Source of the DNA: Tubulanus polymorphus
Taxonomy: Eukaryota > Animalia > Nemertea
DNA length: 64,000 nt
Direction of reading: 5' to 3'
Assembly (NCBI RefSeq): GCF_964204645.1
Contig: NC_134032.1
Location: 15,054,275 to 15,118,274 of the forward strand
Of this stretch, positions 44,813 to 55,907 are shown piece after piece. The translations under genes were made by a program, and so were the position numbers. Numbering within the stretch: position 1 is the stretch's first letter; each line of letters starts with the position of its first letter. Below the pieces are notes generated by a model, which ran no database searches, was not told where the DNA came from, and was given only the letters and a program-made list of their open reading frames with translations.

Positions 44813-45374
44813 CAGTGACCAATTGCCCAAACATTGATTAAACAATGGATTCTGGAGTCCATGGTCAAAGTTTAGCGGTGGACAGTTCATTAAGTGACAA
44901 TTGAAATTGAATTGTTACTATTATTGTCGACCCGTTAATTCTAAAACAATGTTTGAACAACTGGCTCCAAAACGACAAAAATATATATCGAACAAAACGA
45001 CTGTTATTGTTATATTCAAATTCTGTAGTCAAGTAAATATGATTCTTTTCATTTGTTAGTCTTTGCTTATACAATATAACAATATACAAATACTTGAAAA
45101 TACTGTGAAAATAATCTATACACACTATATGGTGCTCTGGCAGTCGAGGAATTTCAAAATTCAAACTATATTTTCGTTTATATCAGAGTTCTTGAAATTC
45201 ATTACACTTCATAAAGTTACATTTATACAACACAACAGCCACTGTAGATTCCTGACCTCTACTACAATGTAGTTATCTTCTGAAGAGTTTCTGATATCTG
45301 TGACAAAGTCGTCATCTTATAGAGAGTTTCTGTAACAGTGTAGTCATCTTCTTGTAGCATTCCTGAATCTGAGC

Positions 45375-48300
45375 TTAGTCCATTGTTCCATTATCATCTA
45401 TATATCATAAAGAAAAGATAAAAAATAAATTCGAGCGTTGAGTTCATAATATAAGCGCGTAAATCCAGGAAAGGTTGCTTATGACAACCTAGGTTAGTAT
45501 CCGCCCCTGAAACCCAACCTTACTTTTCCCTATACTGAAAACTTTTGAAAGGTTGAGTCCGACCCACACCATCAACCTGTCTCACTGAACCCATGGCTTA
45601 CATACATGTAACCGGCAATGTTTATGGGGGACCTCACTTTCTCTTTTGGTACTACATTATTTTTGTGTCGTGCCCTACGCATCTACTAACCTAATTGTGG
45701 TCTTATGCCATCTGCAACAACGTAGGTATCTTCTGGAGGGTTTCTGATATCTGGGACAACGTAGGTATCTTCTGGGGGGTTTCTGACACCTGCGACAACG
45801 ACGTAATCATCTTCTGAAGAGTTTCTTGCATCTGGAACAATGTAGGTATCTTCAGGAGTGTTCCTGACACCTGCGACAACGACGTAGTCATCTTCTGGAG
45901 GATTCCTGACACCTGCGACAACGACGTAGTCATCTTCTGTTGAGTTTCTTGCATCTGGAACAATGTAGGTATCTTCAGGGGGATTCCTGACACCTGCGAC
46001 AACGTAGGTATCTTCTGTAGAGTACCTAACATCTGGGCCAACGTAGTCATCTTCTGGAGAGATCCTGTCGTCAGCTGAAGTAGTTGTTGGCTGAAAATAA
46101 ATCGGTAAACAATTAGGCCTAATAATATATTCGCAAATAAAAAAAATTGAAAACAATAGAAATGTATTATTTATATTGACAAACCTTAAGTGCAACAATG
46201 TAGGTATCTTCTGGAGGGTTCCTGACACCTGTGAAAATGTAGGTATCTTCTGGAGGGTTCATGTCATCTGGGCCAACGTAGTCATCTTCAGGGGGATTCC
46301 TGACACCTGCGACGATGTAGGTATCTTCTGTAGGGTTAGAGACACCTGCAACAACATAGGTATCTTCTGGAGTGTTCCTGATATTTGGGACAACGACGTA
46401 GTCATCTTCTGCAGAGTTTCTGACACCTGCGACAACGTATGTATCTTCTGAAGAGTTTCTTGCATCTGGAACAATGTAGGTATCTTCAGGAGTGTTCCTG
46501 ACACCCGCGACAACGACATAATCATCTTCTGGAGGATTCCTGACACCTGCGACAATGTAGGTATCTTCTGGAGGGTTCATGACATCTGGGCCAACGTAGT
46601 CATCTTCTAGAGGGTTCCGGACACCTGCGACAATGTAGGTATCTTCTGGAGGGTTCCTGACACCCGCGACAAGGTTGTCATCTACGTCATCATCTGAGTT
46701 CCATACATCTACATCATCATCTGTAGAGTTCCATGCATCTACGTCATCATCTGTAGCGTTCCTTACATCTACGTCATCATCTGTAACGTTCCTGACACCT
46801 GCGACAACGACATCTACAATATCTACATCATCGTAGATTTCACCGTCATCTATGTCTTCGTAGATACCGTCCTGTGTTGTGTAGATCCTACCACCAACTC
46901 CAGAAGACGAAGGCTGAAAATAAATCGGTTAAAAAATTTACAAAATATTCACAAATAAAATAAAATTTAAAAAACAATGTGAATGTATTTATATTAACGA
47001 ACCTGATAGCACATTGCCCCTGGATCGGTCGTGTTGTTACCTAAACAATAATAGAATGTTAGATGAAATATTACATGTATTTATTCTTATTCAAAGAACT
47101 TCCTGTTCCCAAAATCAAGTCAGATTATATTCTGGAGCACTCAGTTTCATTGTTATCATTTCTAATTTGACGTAAATCCCCCAAACACGCTTTCACTCAA
47201 CCCCGTTTAATAGTAAAATGATAAATAACAAACCAGTATTTCTGTTTCTCACGTTCCTCCGCTGTCTGATCAACACGGCGATGGCTATAGCAGCCACTAT
47301 TACTAGAATCAGGAAACCGATCCCGAAAACAACTGTCAAATAACTGATTCTATCTGTATCCGTATCTGTATCTGTATCTGTATCTGAAATACAGATTATG
47401 AAACTCATCTATATCAAACAGGTTCAAATTACAGACTTAAGTTTACATATTTAAATTCTACTATTTTCACCTTTAACCCGCCATAGAAGTTTAAACCCAG
47501 CATTACTTCTAGAGTTGTCTGATGTAAACTGTATTGTAATATTTCCAGTGTGGGATCGATTACCTGGAGCAGCCGACCCGCAATACAGATTATAGCCTGG
47601 TGAAGAAATAAATAATGATAAAACTTTATGAATCATAAAAATCATTCACGTTGTGAAGAGTGTTAAGATTTTTACCGGTTTCACTTTTTATCGTCAACGC
47701 GTCCCAGCAACGACCTTTACTTGTCTGTATATGAAAATTTGACTCAAACGATATTTCAACCATCTGCAAAAATATAAATGTAATTCAAAAGTGATCAATT
47801 GTATTGTCAGCAGAATGTAGGACCCGTTTCAGTAGTTCAGTTTCAACTTTAACCCGGAGTTATCAGTTGAACTAAACCCCGGAATAAAGTTAAAACTGAT
47901 TCTAATCCCAATGAACCTCGTGCAGAAAATCTGACGACTTCATTTTTTCCTAAGACCAACATTTCACAATTATTATTCATATATTTACCGTGTTTTCAGG
48001 TGCTTGGATTAACCAGCTACAGTCGATATTGTCATTATAGCTGTTCGGGTAGTTAGGGCTGGATATGACGCCTGATCTACCATTCTGTATTATAGGTGTT
48101 TTACTACATGAATCAACTACAAATAAATATTGAATTGAATTGTTTTATATGTGATTTACTGATTCCATGATCAACTTCTCATTATGCTCAGCTACCTTTC
48201 ACAAATTTCCAACAGAGTTCAAACCCTTTATGGTAGGTACTAGACCTGTCTGATGTAAACCGGATGTCTACCTCACTGGTATAGTTACGTGTAGGTGGCG

Positions 48301-51300
48301 CTGTATTGCCGCAATATACATCACGATCTGCATTAAAGATAAACACACAAATTAATGATACATTTTTAGCTGGATTTGAAAACACAAATCTATCAGTAGC
48401 AGCCACACCGCAATATTCAACACTCCCTGATGATGAAATAAATCTGATAAAATTTTATGAATCATAAAAATCATTTACGTTGTGAATAGTGTTTAGATTT
48501 TTACCGGTTTCACTTTTTATCGTCAACGCGTCAAAGCAATTATCACCAGTTTTGGCCCCAATACCGAAATTCGAGTCAAATGATATTTCAACAATCTGTA
48601 AAAATATAAGAATTAAGATTAATAATTGTTGATTATAATTCAAAGTGAACCGTCGTATTGTTTGCAGAGTGCAGGACCCGTTTGTATGGATCAGTTTTAA
48701 CTTTAATCCAGAGTTATCAGTTCAAAACTAAACCTCGGGTTAAAGTTAAAACTGAATTCAGCCGCCATTGAGCTCGAACTAGTGCAGTAAACCCGACATC
48801 ATTTTTCTCATAGACCAAATATTTACCGTGTTTCCAGGTACTGCAATTAACCATCTACAGTCCAGCCTGCGGTAGTACTTGTTCGGGTAGTTAGGGCTGG
48901 ATAGGACGCCTGATCTACCATTCTGTATTATAGGTGTTTTACTACATGAATCAACTACAAATAAATATTGAATTGAATTGTTTTATATGTGATTTACTGA
49001 TTCCATGATAAACTTCTCATTATGCTCAGCTACCTTTCACAAATTTCCAATGGAGTTCAAACCCTTTATGGTAGGTACTAGACCTGTCTGATGTAAACTG
49101 GATGGCTACCTCACCGGAATAGTAGCGTGTAGGTGGCGCTGTATTGCCACAATATACATCACCATTTTCTGCTGTAAAAATAAACACACAAATCAATGAT
49201 AGATTTTCTAGCTGGATTTGAAAATATACATCAGGAGCCACCAAATAAATCTGATAAAATTTTATAAATCATAAAATTCATTCACGTTGTGAATAGTGTT
49301 TAGATTTTTACCGGTTTTACTTTTTATCGTCAACGCGTCCCGGCAACTATCACCAGTTTTGGCCCCAATACTGAAGTTCGAGTCAAATGATATTTCAACA
49401 ATCTGTAAAAATATAAGAATTAAGATTAATAATTGTTGATTATAATTCAAAGTGAACCGTCGTATTGTTTGCAGAGTGCAGGACCCGTTTGTATAGATCA
49501 GTTTTAACTTTAATCCAGAGTTATCAGTTCAAAACTAAACCTCGGGTTAAAGTTAAAACTGAATTCAGCCGCCATTGAGCTCGAACTAGTGCAGTAAACC
49601 CGACATCATTTTCTCATAGACCAAATATTTACCGTGTTTCCAGGTACTGCAATTAACCATCTACAGTCCAGCCTGCGGTAGTACTTGTTCGGGTAGTTAG
49701 GGCTGGATAGGACGCCTGATCTACCATTCTGTATTATAGGTGTTTTACTACATGAATCAACTACAAATAAATATTGAATTGAATTGTTTTATATGTAATT
49801 TACTGATTCTATGATCAACTTCTCACTAATGACCTACCTTTCACAAACCACCACAGCAGTTTAAACCCACTGTAGCTACCATAGCTGCCTGATGTAAACC
49901 GGATGATTACACGACCGGTATAGTTACGTGTAGGTGGCGCTGTATTGCCACAATATACATTCACTGTAAGAATAAACACACAAATCAATGATATTTTTTA
50001 GCTGGATTGGAAAACACAAATCTATCAGTAGCAGCCACACCGCAATATTCAATACTCCCTGATGATGAAATAAATCTGATAAAACTTTATGAATCATAAA
50101 AATCATTAACGTTGTGAATTTTTACCGGTTTCACTTTGTATCGTCAACACGTCCCAGCACCGACCGTAACTTTTGGGCTCTATGCTAAAATTCGAGTCGA
50201 ATGATAATTCAACCACCTTAAAAACAATATAAGAATTTAGAATTTAAATATCATTCAAAAAGTGAGCAATCGTAAAATATAGGACCCGTTCATATAGATC
50301 AGTTTAAACTTAAACCCGGAGTTACGTATCAGTTCAGAACTTAACCCCGGATTAAAGTTAAAACTGTTTTGACCAAATATTTACCGTATTTTCAGGAGCT
50401 ACAATCGCCCAGCTACAGTTCAGTCCGTGGTAGTAGTTGCCCGGGTAGTTAGGGCTGGATAGGACGCCTGATCTACCATTCTGTATTATAGGTGTTTTAC
50501 TACATGAATCAACTACAAATAAATATTGAATTGAATTGTTTTATATGTAATTTACTGATTCTATGATCAACTACTCATTATGAGCTACCTTTCAAAAACC
50601 GCCAGAACAGTTTAAACCCTTTGTAGCTATTAGAGCTGTCTGATTTAAACTTGATGATTACATCTCCGGAATAGTAACGTGTAGGTGGCGCTGTACTGCC
50701 ACAATATACATCACCATTTCCTGCTGTAAAAATAAACACACAAATCAATGATATATTTTTAGCTGGATCTGAAATCAATTAACTGAATAAATCAAATATA
50801 TTCCTTAATTTATTCATTTGACATCGAGTCTGAAATAGAATGATTCGATTCTTACTGGAATAGTCTGTGTATATTATGTATAATTTGTCACGGCAATTAT
50901 GAGTATCACTGGTCGTATTGGAATCCACTTCGAAGATAGGATCAAACGATATTTCTACTTTCTGGGAATAGAAATAATCATGATTCATTATTATTCAAAT
51001 GCGTTCAAACCCTCTATTACTTGTAACACGGTTATTTAAGGGCTACAGGTAGAATTTAGGAACAAACATGATTCAACTTTTTGAAATAAAAATAATTGAA
51101 TTTATCAATGATCAAATATTTTCACACCATTCTGACTGTCATTAGGGGTTACCCGTTATGGGGTCATCCTTATTAACGAGATGATGTATTTTACCGAGAT
51201 GAACCGAGATCAACCGAGATGAAATTAAATATAACATATTTATTTATTCCTTATCGATTTTAACACTTGAAATCATGTTATATCAGTAATAAATACCTTC

Positions 51301-54300
51301 TAGAGTCATATTTTACATATATTCTACATATTTTACATATTTTTTTATTTAAAAAAATTTTGACTCAAAAAACGTAAACTCGGTTAGCAATAAAATTTCA
51401 TTGAATTTGATTGATCGACGATCTCATCTCGGTAAAGTTAAAAGTTATTTTTCCAAAAATATCCGACAAAATATGTAAAATATGAACCCAGCAGGCATTT
51501 ATTACTGATATTATAATATGATTTCAATGGTTAAAATCGATATGGAATAAATAAATATGTTATATTTAATTTCATCTCGGTTCATCTCGGTAAAATACAT
51601 CATCTCGGTAATAAGGATGACCGCCCGTTATGTGATGTTATAGTTAAACAGTTAAGCAGCCGATTTGGTGCTGGATCCAAGCTACGTCCTACACTAGTCC
51701 AAATTGTACTGACAAAAACATTTTTGATAATATTTCTAGTTTTCCTAACCGCGTATAAATATATTTTACCATTTCCTGTGTTTTATATTTACCATGTTTT
51801 GCGGTGTTCGAATCAACCATCTACAGTGCAGATTGTCGCCATAGTTACCCGGGTAGTTAGGACTGGTTATTACGCCTGTTCTACCGATCTGTACTCTAGA
51901 CTGCCTGCTACATGTCGAGTCAACTACAAATATTAAATTTATTATTATATATGTTATTTACTGATTTCATGATAAACTTCTCATTATGTACTATGGTACC
52001 TTTCAGTATCGTCCAGTGGAGTTTAAACCCGGTATAAGTTCGACTGCTGCCTGTGTTAAACATGATTTTTACAGAACCAGAATAGTAACGTGTAGGTGGC
52101 GCTGTGCTGCCACGATAGCTAGCAATATCTATTTTCAAAATAAAATACACAAATCAAAATTTTTCTAGGTGGATCTGAAAATAATAAACTAAATGAATCG
52201 TAGATATTTTTCGCATATTTTTAAAAATAGAATTATTCCATTCTTACATATCCCGTTAACGAATATGTTTAAAGGGCTACCACTATCCACTCTGAATCTA
52301 GGATCAAACGATATTTCAACTCCCTGAAATTAAGCAATTATAATTGATTATTTTTCAAATCCTAGTACACTTCTCCAAATTATACAGACAAAACATGTTT
52401 CATAAGCGGCAAATATTTTTCACTCCTAAAAGCAACAATTTCCTGCGTTTTCCTATAATTACCGTGTTTTTAGGTGTTTTTATCAACCATACACAGTTCA
52501 GATGGTGATTATAGTTGCCCGGAAAGTTAGGACTGGATATGACGCCTGATGCACCATTCTGTACTCTAGGTGTCTCACTACAAGTCGAATCAACTACAAA
52601 TAAATATTGGTTTTATTGTTTTATATGTGATGAATGAATTTATTTTCTCAAATGTTTGAACATGGGTATAATAATAATTTTGTTTGATTACTGCTGCATA
52701 TGAATTGAAATTTTACTTGTTTGAGGAGGACATCCCCGAGCCGTAAGAGCTGTACCTGAAGGGGATGCCCTCTAAGATTTACTGATTCCATGATCAACTT
52801 CTCATTATGAGCTACCTTTCAAAAACCGCCAAACGAGTTTAAACCCTTTGTAGCTGACAGAGTCGTCTGATGTAAACCGGATGATTACACGACCGGAATA
52901 GACACGTGTAAGTGGCGCTATACTGCCGCAATATACATCACCATTTTCTGCTGTAAATATAAACACACAAATTAATATTTTCTAGCAGGATTTTTAAAAA
53001 CACACATTTCCCTGATGAAAAAATAAATCTGATAAAATTTTATGAATCACAAAAATCATTGTGAAGAGTGTTTAGATTTTTACCAGTTTTACTTTTTATC
53101 GTCAACGCGTCAGGGCAACCACTGTACGTTCTAAATTCTACATGAAATTTCGAGTCGAATGATATTTCAACCATCTGCAAAAAATATATGAATATTCAGC
53201 ATTTAATTATAGTTTAACAGTGAACATGTATGTATTGTTTACAGGATGTAGGACCCGATATATACAGAGTGTCTTAGAAAATGTGATACACAATTCATTA
53301 ACTATTACACGTAATTTTAGCTATTTTCTTGGGGAGGGGGTAAGGTTGGTAGACCTGGATGTTTGCAAGAGGATCGATTGGCCCTAGAGTCAAACCTAAA
53401 ACTACAGATTGTTCCATTGTGTACGTTTATTGTTAAATGACCAGCTGCTGCCTGTTGAGATATTGATCACTAAATCACTGGATTTCACTTGTTGGGTATT
53501 CTACTGTGTAAAAACTGAGGTATTCAAAACATATCTAGCAGGAATCGAAAACTTTAGTCTTCGGAAAGTAACAGATTTTGAGAAATACTGAATCTGATGA
53601 GTCAAAATTCTACGATAAAACGTCGACCTCAAGTGTGAAAACAGTTACCATATTGAACAAATCTGGAGCAGCTTAATTTGTAAGGAGGACCAACAATTTT
53701 ATTCAGGAGAAATTTGTCTTAGTTAATTTATGTCATGTCTCAAATCATCATGTCATATGGCAGCAGATCATTTATCAATACACGCACACAATGCATGCAT
53801 TAATCCTTATTTCTTATATTGGTTCAACTCCAACCATTTTTTAAGCTACGGTAACACATTTTTGAGACGCCCTGTATATCAGTTTTAACTTTACCCTAGA
53901 GTTATCAATTGAACTAAACCTCGGGTTAAAGTTAAAACTGAATTCAGCCGCCATTGAGCTCGAACTAGTGCAGTAAACCCGACATCATTTTTCTCATAGA
54001 CCAAATATTTACCGTGTTTCCAGGTACTGCAATTAACCATCTACAGTCCAGCCTGCGGTAGTAGCTGTTCGGATGGTTAGGGCTGGTTATGACGCCTGAT
54101 CTACCATTCTGTATTATAGGTGTTTTACTACATGAATCAACTACAAATAAATATTGAATTGAATTGTTTTATATGTGATTTACTGAATCCATGATAAACT
54201 TCTCATTATGCTCAGCTACCTTTCACAAATTTCCAATGGAGTCTAAACCCTTTGTAGCTACTAGACCTGTCTGATGTAAACTGGATGACTACACGACCGG

Positions 54301-55907
54301 AATAGTAGCGTGTAGGTGGCGCTGTTTTGCCACAATATACATCTGCCGTAAAAATAAACACACAAATCAATGATAGATTTTTAGCTGGATTTGAAATCTG
54401 TAAACTGAAGAAATCGCAGATATTTCTTCATTTATTCATTTCACATCGAGTTTAAGATTAAATTGTTCGATTCTTACAGTTTGGGTCATTATATATGGAT
54501 ACTTTGTCACGGCAATGACCACTTGCCGTATTGAGTTCCAATTCGAAAATAGGATCAAACGATATTCTTGACACCTAAAAATAGAATCAGTCACGTGGTT
54601 ATCTAAGGGTTTCCCGTAGAATTTAGGATCAAATCAGATTCAACTTTGAACTATGCAACTCTGAAATAAAATTAATTTGATTGTTTCATTATTTCTTAAA
54701 TATTTTCACTACATTCTAACTGGTAGTAATGATTAAGGGTTACCCCTATTGATAATGCATAACGTGATGTAATAGTTAATCAGTTCAGCGCCCGATTTGG
54801 TGCTGGATCCAAGTTCCGTTCTACACTTGTCCAAATATTACTGACAAAAACATTTTTTATTATATTTCTAGTTTTTCTAACCGCGAATATATTTCACAAT
54901 TTCCTGTGTTTTATATTTACCATGTTTTGAGGTATATCAATCTCCCAAAAACATTCCAGATTGTCGCCATAATTGCCAGGGTAGTTAGGACTGGTTATGA
55001 CGCCAGAAGTTCCGTTCTGTTTTCTATACCGCCAGCTACAACTCGAGTCGATGTTATCTGCCCAAACTGTATAGAAAAATACCCGTATCTATAAACTTAT
55101 AAAGCGGTAGTTAGTAGGACTAACTCAACTGATAATGAATTTAGTTAGCCTTCGGGTCGAGGTTAATACCAGTCTATAAAAAAGAGAACTGGTCATCAGT
55201 TACCACACCACACTGATCACCAGGTCACCACAGCTGACTAGTCACCAGTCACTGGACTTGTCACCAGGTCACCACAGCTGACTAGTCATCAGTCGGCACC
55301 ACAGCTAAATGGTCAGACACTGACCGGACAAACTACATCAAACTTTATGGTCTAGTGGTTAGCGTGATCGCCTGGCACAGTGGAGGTCCCGGGTTCGAGG
55401 CTGAGGATAAACTCCTCCCGCTAGGTGCTGATGATAAGTTCCCGCGATAGAAATATCATTTGATTTTGATTAATTAAATATGTTATTAATCTTTTAAATT
55501 CTATATATTGTGGTTTTAAAACCTACTGTCTAATTTGACCGGTGCTATACTACCAATAGGTAGTTGCTGTTTTGAGAAAATTTATTCCTTTTTTTTTAAA
55601 ATAAACAACTGTCCTTGAAACGAGTTCCGGAACAACGCGTCATACTGGCCGTTTAGTGAGGTAATAAAGTGACCTTTTGAGACCATTAGTTTAGAGAGTT
55701 CCTCAGATTGGCACCCGCACCGCGGCATTGATCAAACAGTTCTAACCTATGTGACGGCACTAATCTCAATAATTTAACTCTAAAATTCTTAATCAACAAA
55801 TTTAATCAGTATTAAGTGATATAAATATTATTTGTTCGCTTACCTTGAGAATTCTCGACGAATAAAATTACAGCGACCACAAACAAACTCTTCATCATCA
55901 ACTCCAT
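45375..55907 (-). CDS. 30-exon gene for a type I transmembrane receptor: signal peptide + 8 CUB domains + TM + Tyr-repeat cytoplasmic tail (~1408 aa)
   Basis: Hand-assembled exons, all GT-AG and phase-compatible, no internal stop: 55907-55844 (MELMMKSLFVVAVILFVENSQ); 55066-54921; 54574-54478; 54342-54220; 54140-54013; 53174-53084; 52950-52816; 52593-52463; 52323-52248; 52128-52000; 51923-51793; 50961-50856; 50723-50589; 50512-50385; 50216-50126; 49963-49838; 49760-49633; 49402-49312; 49171-49034; 48954-48827; 48595-48505; 48327-48196; 48116-47989; 47763-47676; 47596-47471; 47383-47234 (TM); 47040-47003; 46913-46185; 46090-45691; 45397-45375 (DDNGTMD*). Sum 4227 nt. CUB signature [16 protein letters not shown].W.I / V.ISF..F / C.D.L.I / YCG...P / V.I.FTSD.S....GF.L.W recurs eight times. 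The last exon is least certain; read-through would end PQLG* at 45686. Confidence 0.92.
45691..46913 (-). CDS. Two cytoplasmic exons with 13/14-aa tyrosine repeats (39/42-nt coding minisatellite)
   Basis: 46913-46185 (243 codons; IYEDI, IYDDV, DDDVD repeats, 12 ED[T/D]Y) and 46090-45691 (9 ED[T/D]Y); consensus NPPED[T/D]Y[I/V]V(V)AGVR; frame open throughout. Confidence 0.9.
47234..47383 (-). CDS. Transmembrane exon with (DT)n stalk and basic stop-transfer
   Basis: DTDTDTDTDTDRISY-LTVVFGIGFLILVIVAAIAIAVLI-RQRRNVRNRNT; 150 nt, phase 1-1, atttcag| and |gtttgt. Confidence 0.92.
47471..48116 (-). CDS. CUB domain 8 (membrane-proximal)
   Basis: [43 protein letters not shown] / MVEISFESNFHIQTSKGRCWDALTIKSET / GYNLYCGSAAPGNRSHTGNITIQFTSDNSRSNAGFKLLWRVK. 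Confidence 0.9.
48196..48954 (-). CDS. CUB domain 7 (recent duplicate of CUB6)
   Basis: A exon identical to CUB6; B IVEISFDSNFGIGAKTGDNCFDALTIKSET; C DRDVYCGNTAPPTRNYTSEVDIRFTSDRSSTYHKGFELCWKFVK. Confidence 0.9.
48690..48756. repeat. ~65-bp intronic hairpin carried in A-B introns of CUB2,5,6,7,8
   Basis: tcagttttaactttaa...ttaaagttaaaactga; copies near 47837, 48690, 49498, 50298, 53878. Confidence 0.75.
49034..49760 (-). CDS. CUB domain 6 (exons A/B/C)
   Basis: [43 protein letters not shown] / IVEISFDSNFSIGAKTGDSCRDALTIKSKT / AENGDVYCGNTAPPTRYYSGEVAIQFTSDRSSTYHKGFELHWKFVK. Confidence 0.9.
49838..50512 (-). CDS. CUB domain 5 (exons A/B/C)
   Basis: [43 protein letters not shown] / VVELSFDSNFSIEPKSYGRCWDVLTIQSET / VNVYCGNTAPPTRNYTGRVIIRFTSGSYGSYSGFKLLWWFVK. 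Confidence 0.9.
50589..51923 (-). CDS. CUB domain 4 (exons A/B/C)
   Basis: [44 protein letters not shown] / KVEISFDPIFEVDSNTTSDTHNCRDKLYIIYTDYS / TGNGDVYCGSTAPPTRYYSGDVIIKFKSDSSNSYKGFKLFWRFLK. Confidence 0.9.
51161..51623. mobile_element. Non-autonomous Mutator-like element (463 bp) in CUB4 intron
   Basis: ~130-bp TIRs starting gggtcatccttatta; exact 9-bp TSD cccgttatg at 51152-51160 and 51624-51632; absent from the paralogous CUB1 intron. Confidence 0.88.
52000..52593 (-). CDS. CUB domain 3 (divergent, lacks second disulfide)
   Basis: [44 protein letters not shown] / GVEISFDPRFRVDSGSPLNIFVNGI / YIASYRGSTAPPTRYYSGSVKIMFNTGSSRTYTGFKLHWTILK. Confidence 0.85.
52816..54140 (-). CDS. CUB domain 2 (exons A/B/C)
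   Basis: [43 protein letters not shown] / MVEISFDSKFHVEFRTYSGCPDALTIKSKT / AENGDVYCGSIAPLTRVYSGRVIIRFTSDDSVSYKGFKLVWRFLK. Confidence 0.9.
53265..53874. mobile_element. Tc1/mariner-type MITE (610 bp) in CUB2 intron
   Basis: ta|cagagtgtcttagaaaatgtg ... cacatttttgagacgccctg|ta; paralogous introns lack it. Confidence 0.8.
54220..55066 (-). CDS. CUB domain 1 (exons A/B/C)
   Basis: [41 protein letters not shown] / VSRISFDPIFELELNTASGHCRDKVSIYNDPN / YVYCGKTAPPTRYYSGRVVIQFTSDRSSSYKGFRLHWKFVK. Confidence 0.9.
55348..55400 (+). other. tRNA-derived fragment (SINE head or pseudo-tRNA)
   Basis: A box tggtctagtgg and B box ggttcgag at tRNA spacing; acceptor stem missing. Confidence 0.6.
55844..55907 (-). 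CDS. Exon 1 of CUB receptor: signal peptide
   Basis: ATG at 55907; MELMMKSLFVVAVILFVENSQ then G|gtaagc (phase 1), joining exon 2 to give ...NSQVWA-DNIDSSC, a plausible cleavage site. Confidence 0.85.

What the first reader, a model, noticed from the sequence alone, without database searches (positions are those of the whole stretch)
45691..46913. Coding minisatellite builds a tunable phosphotyrosine scaffold (21x ED[T/D]Y plus IYEDI, IYDDV)
Seen: 39/42-nt repeats, every unit keeps an acidic-preceded Tyr, with +3 residue alternating among A, V and P (YIVP, YVVP, YVGP, YVVV). Known: acidic-Tyr contexts are Src/Syk-family substrates; YxxP binds Crk/Nck/Abl SH2 (p130Cas substrate domain), YDDV/YDxV binds Nck or SLP-76 (ADAP, nephrin), YEDI resembles the Src-SH2 YEEI. 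Strict ITIM/ITAM consensus is not met. Inference: a multivalent adaptor-clustering tail, possibly for actin remodelling or phagocytosis, whose valency could vary as a VNTR.
Basis: partly seen in the sequence, partly recalled or inferred. Interest (0 to 1): 0.8.

Follow-up and report, generated by a model that had tools for sequence, protein, structure and literature searches.

The report
Tandem tyrosine-motif tail of CUB receptor
A ribbon-worm membrane receptor carries 21 near-identical acidic tyrosine motifs in a disordered tail inside the cell, most likely a multi-site docking platform for signalling proteins, but nothing about its chemistry has been tested.

Summary
On the minus strand, two exons (46913-46185, 46090-45691) encode 21 tandem 13/14-residue units, all with E-D-[T/D]-Y. 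Before them lie RIY, IYEDI and IYDDV and four tyrosine-free acidic 10-residue units. The gene is Tubulanus polymorphus (Nemertea) RefSeq "cubilin-like": signal peptide, 8 CUB domains, one membrane helix, then a 407-residue tail, so the tail is cytoplasmic. The tail is predicted disordered.

Nine genes in this genome carry such tails, three of them on an unrelated FN3-type ectodomain. Unit number runs from 9 to 31. Near-identical paralogues differ by whole units. No relative was found outside the species.

The conserved core is E-D-x-Y-[V/I], not YxxP. Crk- or Nck-type assignments fit only some units and are lost in divergent paralogues. ITAM, ITIM, NPxY and PPxY are absent.

They closely resemble RANK's PTEDEY. 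A TRAF6-like gene is present.

Best reading: a phosphotyrosine docking array (about 0.5). The rival is direct TRAF6 docking (about 0.2). Phosphorylation, expression and variation between individuals were not tested. The scan had already noted two paralogues with the same reading.

The parts
46185..46913 (-). Tail exon A (243 codons, phase 0/0). It holds the membrane-proximal Tyr module, 4 Tyr-free acidic units, then 12 E-D-x-Y units.
   Evidence: Translation. Exact match to P0036 residues 1026-1268.
46800..46913 (-). Membrane-proximal module with RIY, IYEDI and IYDDV. It is not repeated and is conserved in all family members.
   Evidence: Alignment of 9 paralogues. dN/dS is about 0.2 at dS about 1.1 against the divergent paralogues.
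46679..46792 (-). Four 30-nt (10-residue) Tyr-free acidic units, R-N-x-T-D-D-D-V-D.
   Evidence: TRF period 30, 3.9 copies. Translation.
45691..46090 (-). Tail exon B (400 nt, phase 0 to 1) with 9 E-D-x-Y units.
   Evidence: Translation. P0036 residues 1269-1401.
45375..45397 (-). Terminal mini-exon (last 7 residues plus TAA stop), reached from the donor at 45691.
   Evidence: P0036 C-terminus maps here. The same frame and stop position are kept in the 75%-identical paralogue L031.
47003..47040 (-). Mini-exon between the membrane exon and the tail (N-N-T-T-D-P-G-A-M-C-Y-Q).
   Evidence: Sequence reading. P0036 residues 1014-1025.
47234..47383 (-). Exon with a (D-T)n stalk, the membrane helix (P0036 978-1001) and the R-Q-R-R-N-V-R-N-R stop-transfer segment.
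   Evidence: AlphaFold helix with pLDDT about 80.
47472..55067 (-). 24 exons encoding 8 CUB domains, three exons per domain.
   Evidence: Pfam CUB, 8 stretches, E 1.5e-124 on P0036. Exon map.
55845..55907 (-). First coding exon, the signal peptide.
   Evidence: ORF list. P0036 residues 1-21.
45240..45374 (-). Three decayed repeat units just after the stop codon, in different frames and with stops. They are relics of a formerly longer tail.
   Evidence: Three-frame translation shows E-D-D-Y-T-V, D-D-D-F-V and S-S-E-D-N-Y-I-V-V fragments. Paralogues differ here by frameshifting indels.

Best explanation
The two exons encode most of the disordered cytoplasmic tail of a type I membrane receptor with 8 CUB domains, in the ribbon worm Tubulanus polymorphus. 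The tail has a conserved membrane-proximal segment with three tyrosines (RIY, IYEDI, IYDDV). Then come four tyrosine-free acidic units and 21 tandem copies of a short linear motif whose conserved core is [P/S/T/A]-[P/T]-E-D-[T/D]-Y-[V/I]. Inferred mechanism: ligand-driven clustering of the CUB ectodomain lets a cytoplasmic tyrosine kinase dock on the phosphorylated YEDI/YDDV segment. The kinase would be of the Src or Syk class, and the arrangement resembles those of CDCP1 and p130Cas. It then phosphorylates the repeat tyrosines, making a high-valency platform for SH2 proteins that accept pY-[V/I]-V-x. About 60% of the units also fit the TRAF6 motif, so TRAF6 may be recruited as well. Unit number is set by unequal exchange between the 39/42-nt repeats, so valency differs from gene to gene. 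Shown here: the repeat, the gene model, the topology, predicted disorder, the conservation pattern, the family and its copy-number lability. Inferred: phosphorylation, the kinase and the partners.
For: The repeat and its frame are established. The public model P0036 maps exactly onto 30 exons of the window. Topology follows from 8 CUB domains by Pfam, a hydrophobic helix at 978-1001 followed by a basic segment, and a confident helix in AlphaFold. Disorder is indicated by tail pLDDT below 50 and by a position on the unfolded side of the charge-hydropathy plot. Conservation is strong. Of about 150 units in 9 genes, Tyr is kept in all but 2 (one F, one D), E(-3) in all, D(-2) in all but 4, and +1 is V or I in 99%. 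Tyr-to-Tyr spacing shows that no units were hidden from this count. The same core survives in subfamilies whose neighbouring unique segment has dS about 1.1 and dN/dS about 0.2. R(-7) is kept through three synonymous codons. The same tail sits on an unrelated F5/8C-FN3 ectodomain (P0004, P0005), as expected of a portable signalling module. The genome holds at least 36 SH2-domain exon matches. There is precedent in the literature. DCBLD1/2 are CUB receptors with 7-8 intracellular YxxP sites that Fyn and Abl phosphorylate and that bind CRKL (PMC6029619). CDCP1 is phosphorylated and bound by Src-family kinases (PMC3534080, PMC4395315).
Against: Residues +2 and +3, which set SH2 specificity, are not conserved between subfamilies, so no single SH2 partner can be named. 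Core codons (GAA GAT .. TAC) hardly vary even at silent sites. Part of the 'conservation' therefore reflects recent homogenisation of the array and not selection on each tyrosine. The invariant E at -3, which is never D, is stricter than typical kinase preferences and fits a TRAF-type pocket better. No relatives in other species are available to test long-term constraint.
Confidence: 0.5

Rival explanations
1. The array is a phosphorylation-independent platform for TRAF6, or another TRAF MATH domain. Each P-x-E-D-x-Y unit would be a TRAF6-interaction motif (PxExx[FYWHDE]). Many weak sites in a row would capture TRAF6 trimers by avidity and start NF-kB/JNK-type innate immune signalling.
For: 12 of 21 units here, and 5-20 units in every paralogue, match PxExxY. 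Composition shuffles give a mean of 0.14 and a maximum of 2. It is the only named motif kept by all subfamilies. Units such as P-T-E-D-D-Y and P-P-E-D-E-Y differ by one residue from the RANK site in the peptide RKIPTEDEY (Kd 78 uM; PMC9597381). Single sites are weak and binding to trimers is avidity-driven (PMC9597381), which gives tandem repetition a rationale. The invariant positions E(-3) and Y(0) are the motif's key positions. A TRAF6-like MATH domain exists at G000:C11:4076033, and its best solved relatives are all TRAF6 (E 2.4e-28). The equivalents of human R392 and F410, which form the pocket for the aromatic residue (PMC9597381), are kept. F471 and Y473 are also kept; their role as contact residues is from my memory.
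Against: Pro at motif position 0 is described as strictly required (PMC9597381), yet 9 of 21 units have S or T there. The strict use of Tyr, with no W, F, E or D, is not explained, and neither are the near-invariant V/I at +1 and D at -2. The repeat makes the 12 matches one evolutionary event, not 12. Known TRAF6 receptors carry 1-3 sites. The published case of phospho-dependent TRAF6 binding to a PxExxY site (DCBLD2) has been retracted (PMC12077906).
Confidence: 0.2
2. The repeat is a largely neutral coding minisatellite. On this view it is an acidic, disordered spacer that expanded by slippage or unequal exchange, with no site-specific function for each tyrosine.
For: Silent sites of the core codons are almost invariant, and four paralogues share 96-99% identical non-coding flanks. 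Much of the uniformity is therefore young. Decayed units lie after the stop codon. No homologue was found outside the species.
Against: All 9 genes keep open frames through 9-31 units, and every indel is a whole unit. Subfamilies separated by dS about 1.1 still share E-D-x-Y-[V/I], while +2 to +6 have turned over. The module has been retained on two unrelated ectodomains. R(-7) shows synonymous turnover with the amino acid kept.
Confidence: 0.12
3. The tyrosines are YxxPhi endocytic sorting signals read by AP-2. This would make the protein a high-capacity scavenger receptor, as its 'cubilin-like' name suggests.
For: A CUB-array ectodomain is typical of ligand-capturing endocytic receptors. 7 of 26 tail tyrosines fit Yxx[LIMFV].
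Against: A bulky hydrophobic residue at +3 is present in only 5 of 21 units here. It is nearly absent in the divergent paralogues, where the units read YVFA, YVNT and YVVA. What is conserved lies upstream of Tyr (E, D), which AP-2 does not read (established knowledge of the mu2 pocket).
Confidence: 0.06

Closest known systems
DCBLD1/DCBLD2 (ESDN) scaffolding receptors
   Same: Both are type I membrane proteins with a CUB-containing ectodomain and a cytoplasmic tail whose main conserved feature is many tyrosine motifs. DCBLD1/2 have 7-8 YxxP sites that Fyn and Abl phosphorylate and that bind the CRKL SH2 domain (PMC6029619).
   Different: There is no sequence similarity in the tail. Here the motifs are exact tandem repeats (21, up to 31) and not dispersed sites. 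The conserved core is E-D-x-Y-[V/I] and YxxP is not conserved. The ectodomain is 8 CUB domains without LCCL or discoidin domains.
CDCP1 (CUB domain-containing protein 1)
   Same: Both are CUB-type ectodomain receptors with a single membrane helix. In CDCP1, tail tyrosines are phosphorylated and bound by Src-family kinases, a docking-then-spreading logic (PMC3534080, PMC4395315). Pfam CDCP1-type CUB models hit the ectodomain here (81 bits, under the generic CUB hit).
   Different: CDCP1 has five tail tyrosines and no repeats. The tail here shows no detectable homology. The CDCP1-model hits overlap the general CUB hits, so they do not show orthology.
p130Cas (BCAR1) substrate domain
   Same: It has a kinase-docking site next to a disordered array of many (15) similar tyrosine motifs that become SH2 docking sites. 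This is established knowledge, recalled and not checked in a paper here.
   Different: p130Cas is a cytosolic adaptor, not a receptor. Its motifs are YxxP, are not tandem DNA repeats, and have no acidic E-D at -3 and -2 as an invariant feature.
TRAF6-interaction motifs of RANK and CD40
   Same: The core P-x-E-x-x-aromatic motif lies in a disordered cytoplasmic tail. RANK's P-T-E-D-E-Y is nearly identical to many units here (PMC9597381).
   Different: RANK and CD40 have one to three sites, not tandem arrays. About 40% of the units here lack the Pro. Binding has not been tested.

Membership tests
CUB-domain membrane receptor | Pfam CUB (PF00431) domains in the ectodomain | tested here: met
   8 CUB stretches, E 1.5e-124, on P0036. 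Partial hits on single exons.
CUB-domain membrane receptor | Signal peptide plus a single membrane helix that places the tail in the cytoplasm | tested here: met
   Hydrophobic N-terminus. Helix at 978-1001 followed by a basic segment. AlphaFold helix with pLDDT about 80.
Cubilin (the RefSeq name is 'cubilin-like') | N-terminal EGF repeats, 27 CUB domains, no membrane helix and no cytoplasmic tail (established knowledge) | tested here: not met
   Pfam finds no EGF domain and 8 CUB domains. A membrane helix and a 407-residue tail are present.
ITAM | Two Yxx[L/I] spaced by 6-12 residues | tested here: not met
   0 matches in all 8 tails. The nearest is YEDI-x5-YDDV.
ITIM / ITSM | [S/I/V/L]xYxx[I/L/V] or TxYxx[V/I] | tested here: not met
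   0 ITIM matches in any tail; one ITSM match, in one paralogue only. Position -2 is always D.
YxxP scaffold (p130Cas / DCBLD type) | Multiple YxxP motifs conserved among relatives | tested here: not met
   7 YxxP here and 5-9 in close paralogues, but 1 in each divergent paralogue.
TRAF6-interaction motif | Pro at motif position 0 | tested here: inconclusive
   P in 12 of 21 units here and 59% of 143 units overall. The rest are S, T or A.
TRAF6-interaction motif | Glu at +2 and an aromatic or acidic residue at +5 | tested here: met
   E in all units. Y in all but two, and those two are F and D.
TRAF6-interaction motif | Located in an accessible cytosolic region, with a TRAF6 MATH domain present in the organism | tested here: met
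   Disordered cytoplasmic tail. TRAF6-like MATH domain with conserved pocket residues.
TRAF6-interaction motif | Physical binding to the MATH domain | not testable with these tools
   Needs peptide binding assays.
Phosphotyrosine scaffold | Tyrosines are phosphorylated in vivo | not testable with these tools
   No proteomic data could be reached.
Coding minisatellite / VNTR | Head-to-tail units of 10-100 nt that stay in frame | tested here: met
   Periods 30, 39 and 42 nt; open frames in all 9 genes.
Coding minisatellite / VNTR | Copy number varies between individuals | not tested
Between paralogues with 96-99% identical flanks, exon A has 174-245 codons and exon B 133-199.

The most novel reading that the evidence does not exclude
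The tandem units are TRAF6-interaction motifs. If so, this species-restricted family would be the first known receptors to recruit TRAF6 through 5-20 tandem low-affinity sites. That would be an avidity switch whose gain is set by repeat number, placed on CUB or FN3 recognition ectodomains as an innate immune sensor family, possibly gated by tyrosine phosphorylation at the motif's aromatic position.
Probability: 0.2. Interest if true: 0.75.

Novelty: new variant of a known kind. Interest (0 to 1): 0.55.

Why it matters
Receptors that signal through many tyrosine sites are known, but their sites are dispersed and fixed in number. Here the sites are a DNA tandem repeat, so the number of docking sites changes by whole units. 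It is 9, 11, 18-21 and 31 in sister genes. If the sites are functional, this is a natural series for asking how valency sets signalling strength. It also adds a lineage-specific receptor family in a phylum (Nemertea) whose signalling and immunity are almost unstudied. The overlap with the TRAF6 motif gives a concrete, cheap binding test.

Tried and rejected

Searches for relatives.
- The word-based protein search with exon A found nothing, but it is length-limited.
- The exhaustive HMMER search of 1.84 billion representatives returned only T. polymorphus proteins as true relatives. The remaining hits (E 1e-12 and weaker) are unrelated low-complexity repeats such as cuticle-like S-Q-E-Y-G-A-P arrays.
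- The ESM Atlas feature search gave scores of 0.77 or less, which is noise.
- Pfam hits on the tail exons (LCAT, CSD2 and others) are weak partial matches to a biased sequence. I discarded them.

Structure. AlphaFold gave no fold for the tail, so a beta-solenoid reading was dropped.

Motifs. ITAM, ITIM, NPxY, PPxY and YxxM are absent. TRAF2-type [PSAT]x[QE]E is absent from the six CUB-type tails scanned and matches twice in each of the two FN3-type paralogue tails scanned; the units carry D where that motif needs E. The observation that -5 is always P, S, T or A is weak evidence, because those are the four first-base variants of an NCT codon.

Precedent. The DCBLD2 case of phospho-dependent TRAF6 binding at PxExxY is retracted (PMC12077906), so I did not use it as support.

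Exon joining. Whole-protein analyses used the public model P0036 returned by the search tool, which matches the window exon by exon.
Full report
**1. The observation**

Tandem Repeats Finder finds a period-39 array (24.3 copies, 45709-46672), period-42 and higher-order 120/123-nt periodicities, and a separate period-30 array at 46679-46792. The coding strand is the minus strand.

- Exon A runs 46913-46185. It has a ttttcag|CCT acceptor and an AAG|gtttgt donor, and is phase 0/0.
- Exon B runs 46090-45691. It has a ttttcag|CCA acceptor and a TTAG|gttagt donor.

Together the two exons hold 21 units of 13 or 14 residues, each with E-D-[T/D]-Y. The residue at +3 is A 8, P 7, V 5, T 1. Ahead of the units lie RIY, IYEDI and IYDDV, and four Tyr-free 10-residue units of the R-N-x-T-D-D-D-V-D type. 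The one qualification is that the 30-nt units carry no tyrosine.

**2. The gene**

Upstream on the same strand are several further exons:
- a 38-nt mini-exon at 47040-47003;
- an exon with a (D-T)n stalk, a 24-residue hydrophobic helix and a basic R-Q-R-R-N-V-R-N-R segment at 47383-47234;
- 24 exons of CUB domains;
- a signal-peptide exon.

The exhaustive HMMER search with exon A and a region search with a paralogue returned public models. Their source names identify the organism as Tubulanus polymorphus, a palaeonemertean ribbon worm. One model, P0036 (1408 residues, RefSeq 'cubilin-like'), matches the window exactly over 30 exons from 55907 to 45375. This includes both repeat exons and a 7-residue terminal mini-exon at 45397-45375.

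All whole-protein work used this public model.

Pfam finds 8 CUB domains and nothing in the tail. AlphaFold, run on an alignment of eight family tails, gives a confident membrane helix and pLDDT below 50 for the whole tail. The tail has 23% D+E, 16% V and 6.4% Y, and lies on the disordered side of the charge-hydropathy boundary. It is therefore a 407-residue, disordered, cytoplasmic tail of a type I receptor. The name 'cubilin-like' is misleading, because cubilin has EGF repeats, 27 CUB domains and no membrane anchor.

**3. The family**

A six-frame search of the worm's own genome (268 Mb) finds nine loci with such tails.
- Six are on contig 8, at 11.92, 14.87, 15.10 (this gene), 15.57, 15.87 and 16.28 Mb.
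- Three are tandem copies on contig 2, at 4.37-4.39 Mb.

The contig-2 genes (P0004, P0005) have a quite different ectodomain of F5/8C-like and FN3 domains but the same type of tail. RefSeq calls one of them 'receptor-type tyrosine-protein phosphatase delta-like', although Pfam finds no phosphatase domain. Two more genes (contig 8, 3.117 and 4.142 Mb) share only the mini-exon and the membrane-proximal module, with zero or one unit. This suggests the arrays grew from a single unit.

E-D-x-Y counts per gene are 21, 18, 20, 19, 31, 11, 9, 9 and 9. Four paralogues have non-coding flanks 96-99% identical to this gene. Even so, their exon A has 243, 184, 245 and 174 codons and their exon B has 133, 199, 147 and 188. 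All differences are whole units. One paralogue has three tail exons. Valency is therefore labile on a short evolutionary scale, which supports the 'tunable' idea at the level of paralogues. Variation between individuals could not be examined.

Outside this species no true relative appeared among 1.84 billion representatives. Other nemerteans may simply be missing from that library.

**4. What is conserved**

I pooled 143 units from the nine genes (by subfamily).

| Position | Residues found |
|---|---|
| -7 | mostly R, through three synonymous codons (AGG, AGA, CGG) |
| -6 | N in 81% |
| -5 | P 59%, otherwise S, T or A |
| -3 | E always |
| -2 | D in all but 4 units |
| -1 | T, D or E |
| 0 | Y in all but 2 units (one F, one D) |
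| +1 | V or I in 99% |
| +2 to +6 | variable |

Because the units were collected with a motif pattern, I checked for hidden units through the spacing of successive tyrosines. Spacing is 13 or 14 everywhere except at exon joins and at the two known Tyr losses. No units with a mutated core were missed.

The consensus units of the three subfamilies keep only E-D-x-Y-[V/I]. These are R-N-P-P-E-D-T-Y-I-V-A-G-V, [R/K]-N-P-P-E-D-E-Y-V-F-A-D-A, and the alternating M-N-P-T-E-D-D-Y-V-N-T-N-I / R-K-A-T-E-D-T-Y-V-V-A-D-V.

The adjoining non-repeated module (RIY, [V/I]YEDI, [V/I]YD[D/N]V) has dS about 1.1 and dN/dS about 0.2 between subfamilies (only 38 codons). That part of the tail is under purifying selection, and the subfamilies are old.

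One caveat applies. The core codons GAA-GAT-..-TAC barely vary even at silent sites, across all subfamilies. Homogenisation, or some constraint at the DNA level, therefore contributes to the uniformity. The tyrosines cannot be counted as 150 independent observations.

**5. Motif readings**

- Strict ITAM, ITIM, NPxY, PPxY and YxxM are absent from all tails.
- YxxP, the basis of the Crk/Nck/Abl idea, occurs 7 times here but once in each divergent paralogue.
- YxN (Grb2 type) occurs five times, but only in the contig-2 genes.
- Yxx[LIMFV] fits 7 of 26 tyrosines and is not conserved.
- YEDI-x5-YDDV is ITAM-like but fails on spacing and on the final residue.
- PxExx[FYWHDE], the TRAF6 MATH-domain motif, is kept in the units of every paralogue. 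There are 12 matches here and 5-20 elsewhere, against 0.14 expected from composition shuffles.

On the TRAF6 motif, PMC9597381 describes Pro and Glu as strictly needed and notes an aromatic or acidic residue at +5. The RANK peptide RKIPTEDEY binds with Kd 78 uM, and trimer binding is avidity-driven. Units here such as P-T-E-D-D-Y or P-P-E-D-E-Y differ from RANK's P-T-E-D-E-Y by one residue.

The genome has a TRAF6-like MATH domain at contig 11, 4.076 Mb. Its best solved relatives are all TRAF6 (E 2.4e-28), and the equivalents of human R392, F410, F471 and Y473 are kept. The pocket role of R392 and F410 comes from PMC9597381; the role of the other two residues is from my memory. There are also TRAF2-like and TRAF3-like genes.

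Several points count against a pure TRAF6 reading:
- 9 of 21 units lack the Pro;
- Tyr is never replaced by W or E;
- the conserved D(-2) and V/I(+1) are not part of that motif;
- the 12 matches stem from one repeat, so they are one event.

The published precedent for phospho-dependent TRAF6 binding to a PxExxY site (DCBLD2) has been retracted (PMC12077906). I give it no weight.

**6. Most likely mechanism**

I judge the tail to be a phosphotyrosine docking array (about 0.5). A conserved membrane-proximal YEDI/YDDV segment would serve as the kinase docking site, as in CDCP1 (PMC3534080) or p130Cas. It is followed by a substrate array whose units become SH2 docking sites. The genome has the usual SH2 complement.

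The identity of the partners is open. The pY-[V/I]-V-x pattern recalls the hydrophobic-preferring SH2 class (PLC-gamma, SHP2). That is a recollection, not a test.

The alternatives, with my estimates, are:
- direct TRAF6 docking, about 0.2;
- a largely neutral acidic minisatellite, about 0.12;
- AP-2 sorting signals, about 0.06.

The first two readings (phosphotyrosine docking and TRAF6 docking) can coexist.

**7. Comparison with known systems, and novelty**

The closest systems by logic are DCBLD1/2, which are CUB receptors with 7-8 YxxP sites read by CRKL after Fyn/Abl phosphorylation (PMC6029619), and CDCP1. The tail here is not homologous to either.

Three things are new. The docking sites are an exact tandem DNA repeat with 9-31 copies. 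The same repeat tail has been placed on two unrelated ectodomains. The unit also fits a TRAF6 motif. I class this as a new variant of a known kind.

The scan had already noted two paralogues (s1-510433, s1-510405), and a follow-up on one reached the same phosphotyrosine reading. That agreement is not independent evidence.

Noticed in passing
window 45240-45374 (minus strand): Three decayed repeat units lie just after the stop codon, in different frames and with stops. Paralogues differ here by frameshifting indels. The tail was once longer, or a former tail exon has died.
   Followed up: partly
window 46679-46792 (minus strand): There are four Tyr-free 10-residue units, R-N-[A/V/S]-T-D-D-D-V-D; paralogues have 4-8. 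Each holds a T-D-D-D casein-kinase-2-type site and a D-D-V-D that resembles a caspase-3/7 cleavage site. They sit between the docking module and the Tyr array.
   Followed up: no
window 45691-46672 and loci L031-L038: The core codons GAA-GAT-(ACC/GAC)-TAC are almost invariant at silent sites in all subfamilies. The neighbouring unique segment has dS about 1.1. This is unexplained; homogenisation, codon preference or a DNA-level constraint are possible.
   Followed up: partly
G000:C2:4364500-4394499 (L036-L038; P0004, P0005): Three tandem genes carry an F5/8C-like plus FN3 ectodomain with the same type of tail. Their units alternate Y-V-N-T (Grb2-type YxN) and Y-V-V-A. RefSeq names one 'receptor-type tyrosine-protein phosphatase delta-like', but Pfam finds no phosphatase domain.
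   Followed up: partly
G000:C8:3116400-3118600 (L048) and G000:C8:4141100-4143300 (L049): Two further genes share the mini-exon and the membrane-proximal module (P-I-Y-Q-T-Q .. V-Y-E-D-I .. Y-D-D-V) but have zero or one repeat unit. They may represent the unexpanded state. Their ectodomains were not examined.
   Followed up: partly
L031 (G000:C8:14871500-14881499): This paralogue has three tail exons. The second and third each begin with a copy of part of the membrane-proximal module (R-I-Y-T-T-Q-D-E-I-Y-D-D-V). This is whole-exon duplication on top of unit duplication, and gives 31 units and 39 Tyr.
   Followed up: partly
window 47351-47386 (minus strand): A 6-nt repeat (GATACA x6) encodes a (D-T)n stalk just outside the membrane. 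Its length differs between paralogues (D-T x5, D-K-D-T-D, D-T-D-T-S-S).
   Followed up: no
protein P0010: Among the weak HMMER hits is a 476-residue unnamed protein from a 2.08-Mb contig, probably bacterial. It has four tandem copies of a unit full of eukaryote-like tyrosine motifs (E-D-D-Y-T-D-M, E-Y-V-D-M, T-Y-Q-N-V, I-Y-E-D-P). It resembles tandem-phosphotyrosine bacterial effectors. It is not related by descent to the worm tail.
   Followed up: no
G000:C11:4076033-4076383, C7:21150655-21151017, C2:22533982-22534648: TRAF6-like, TRAF2-like and TRAF3-like MATH domains are present in the worm genome. The TRAF6-like one keeps the peptide-pocket residues.
   Followed up: partly
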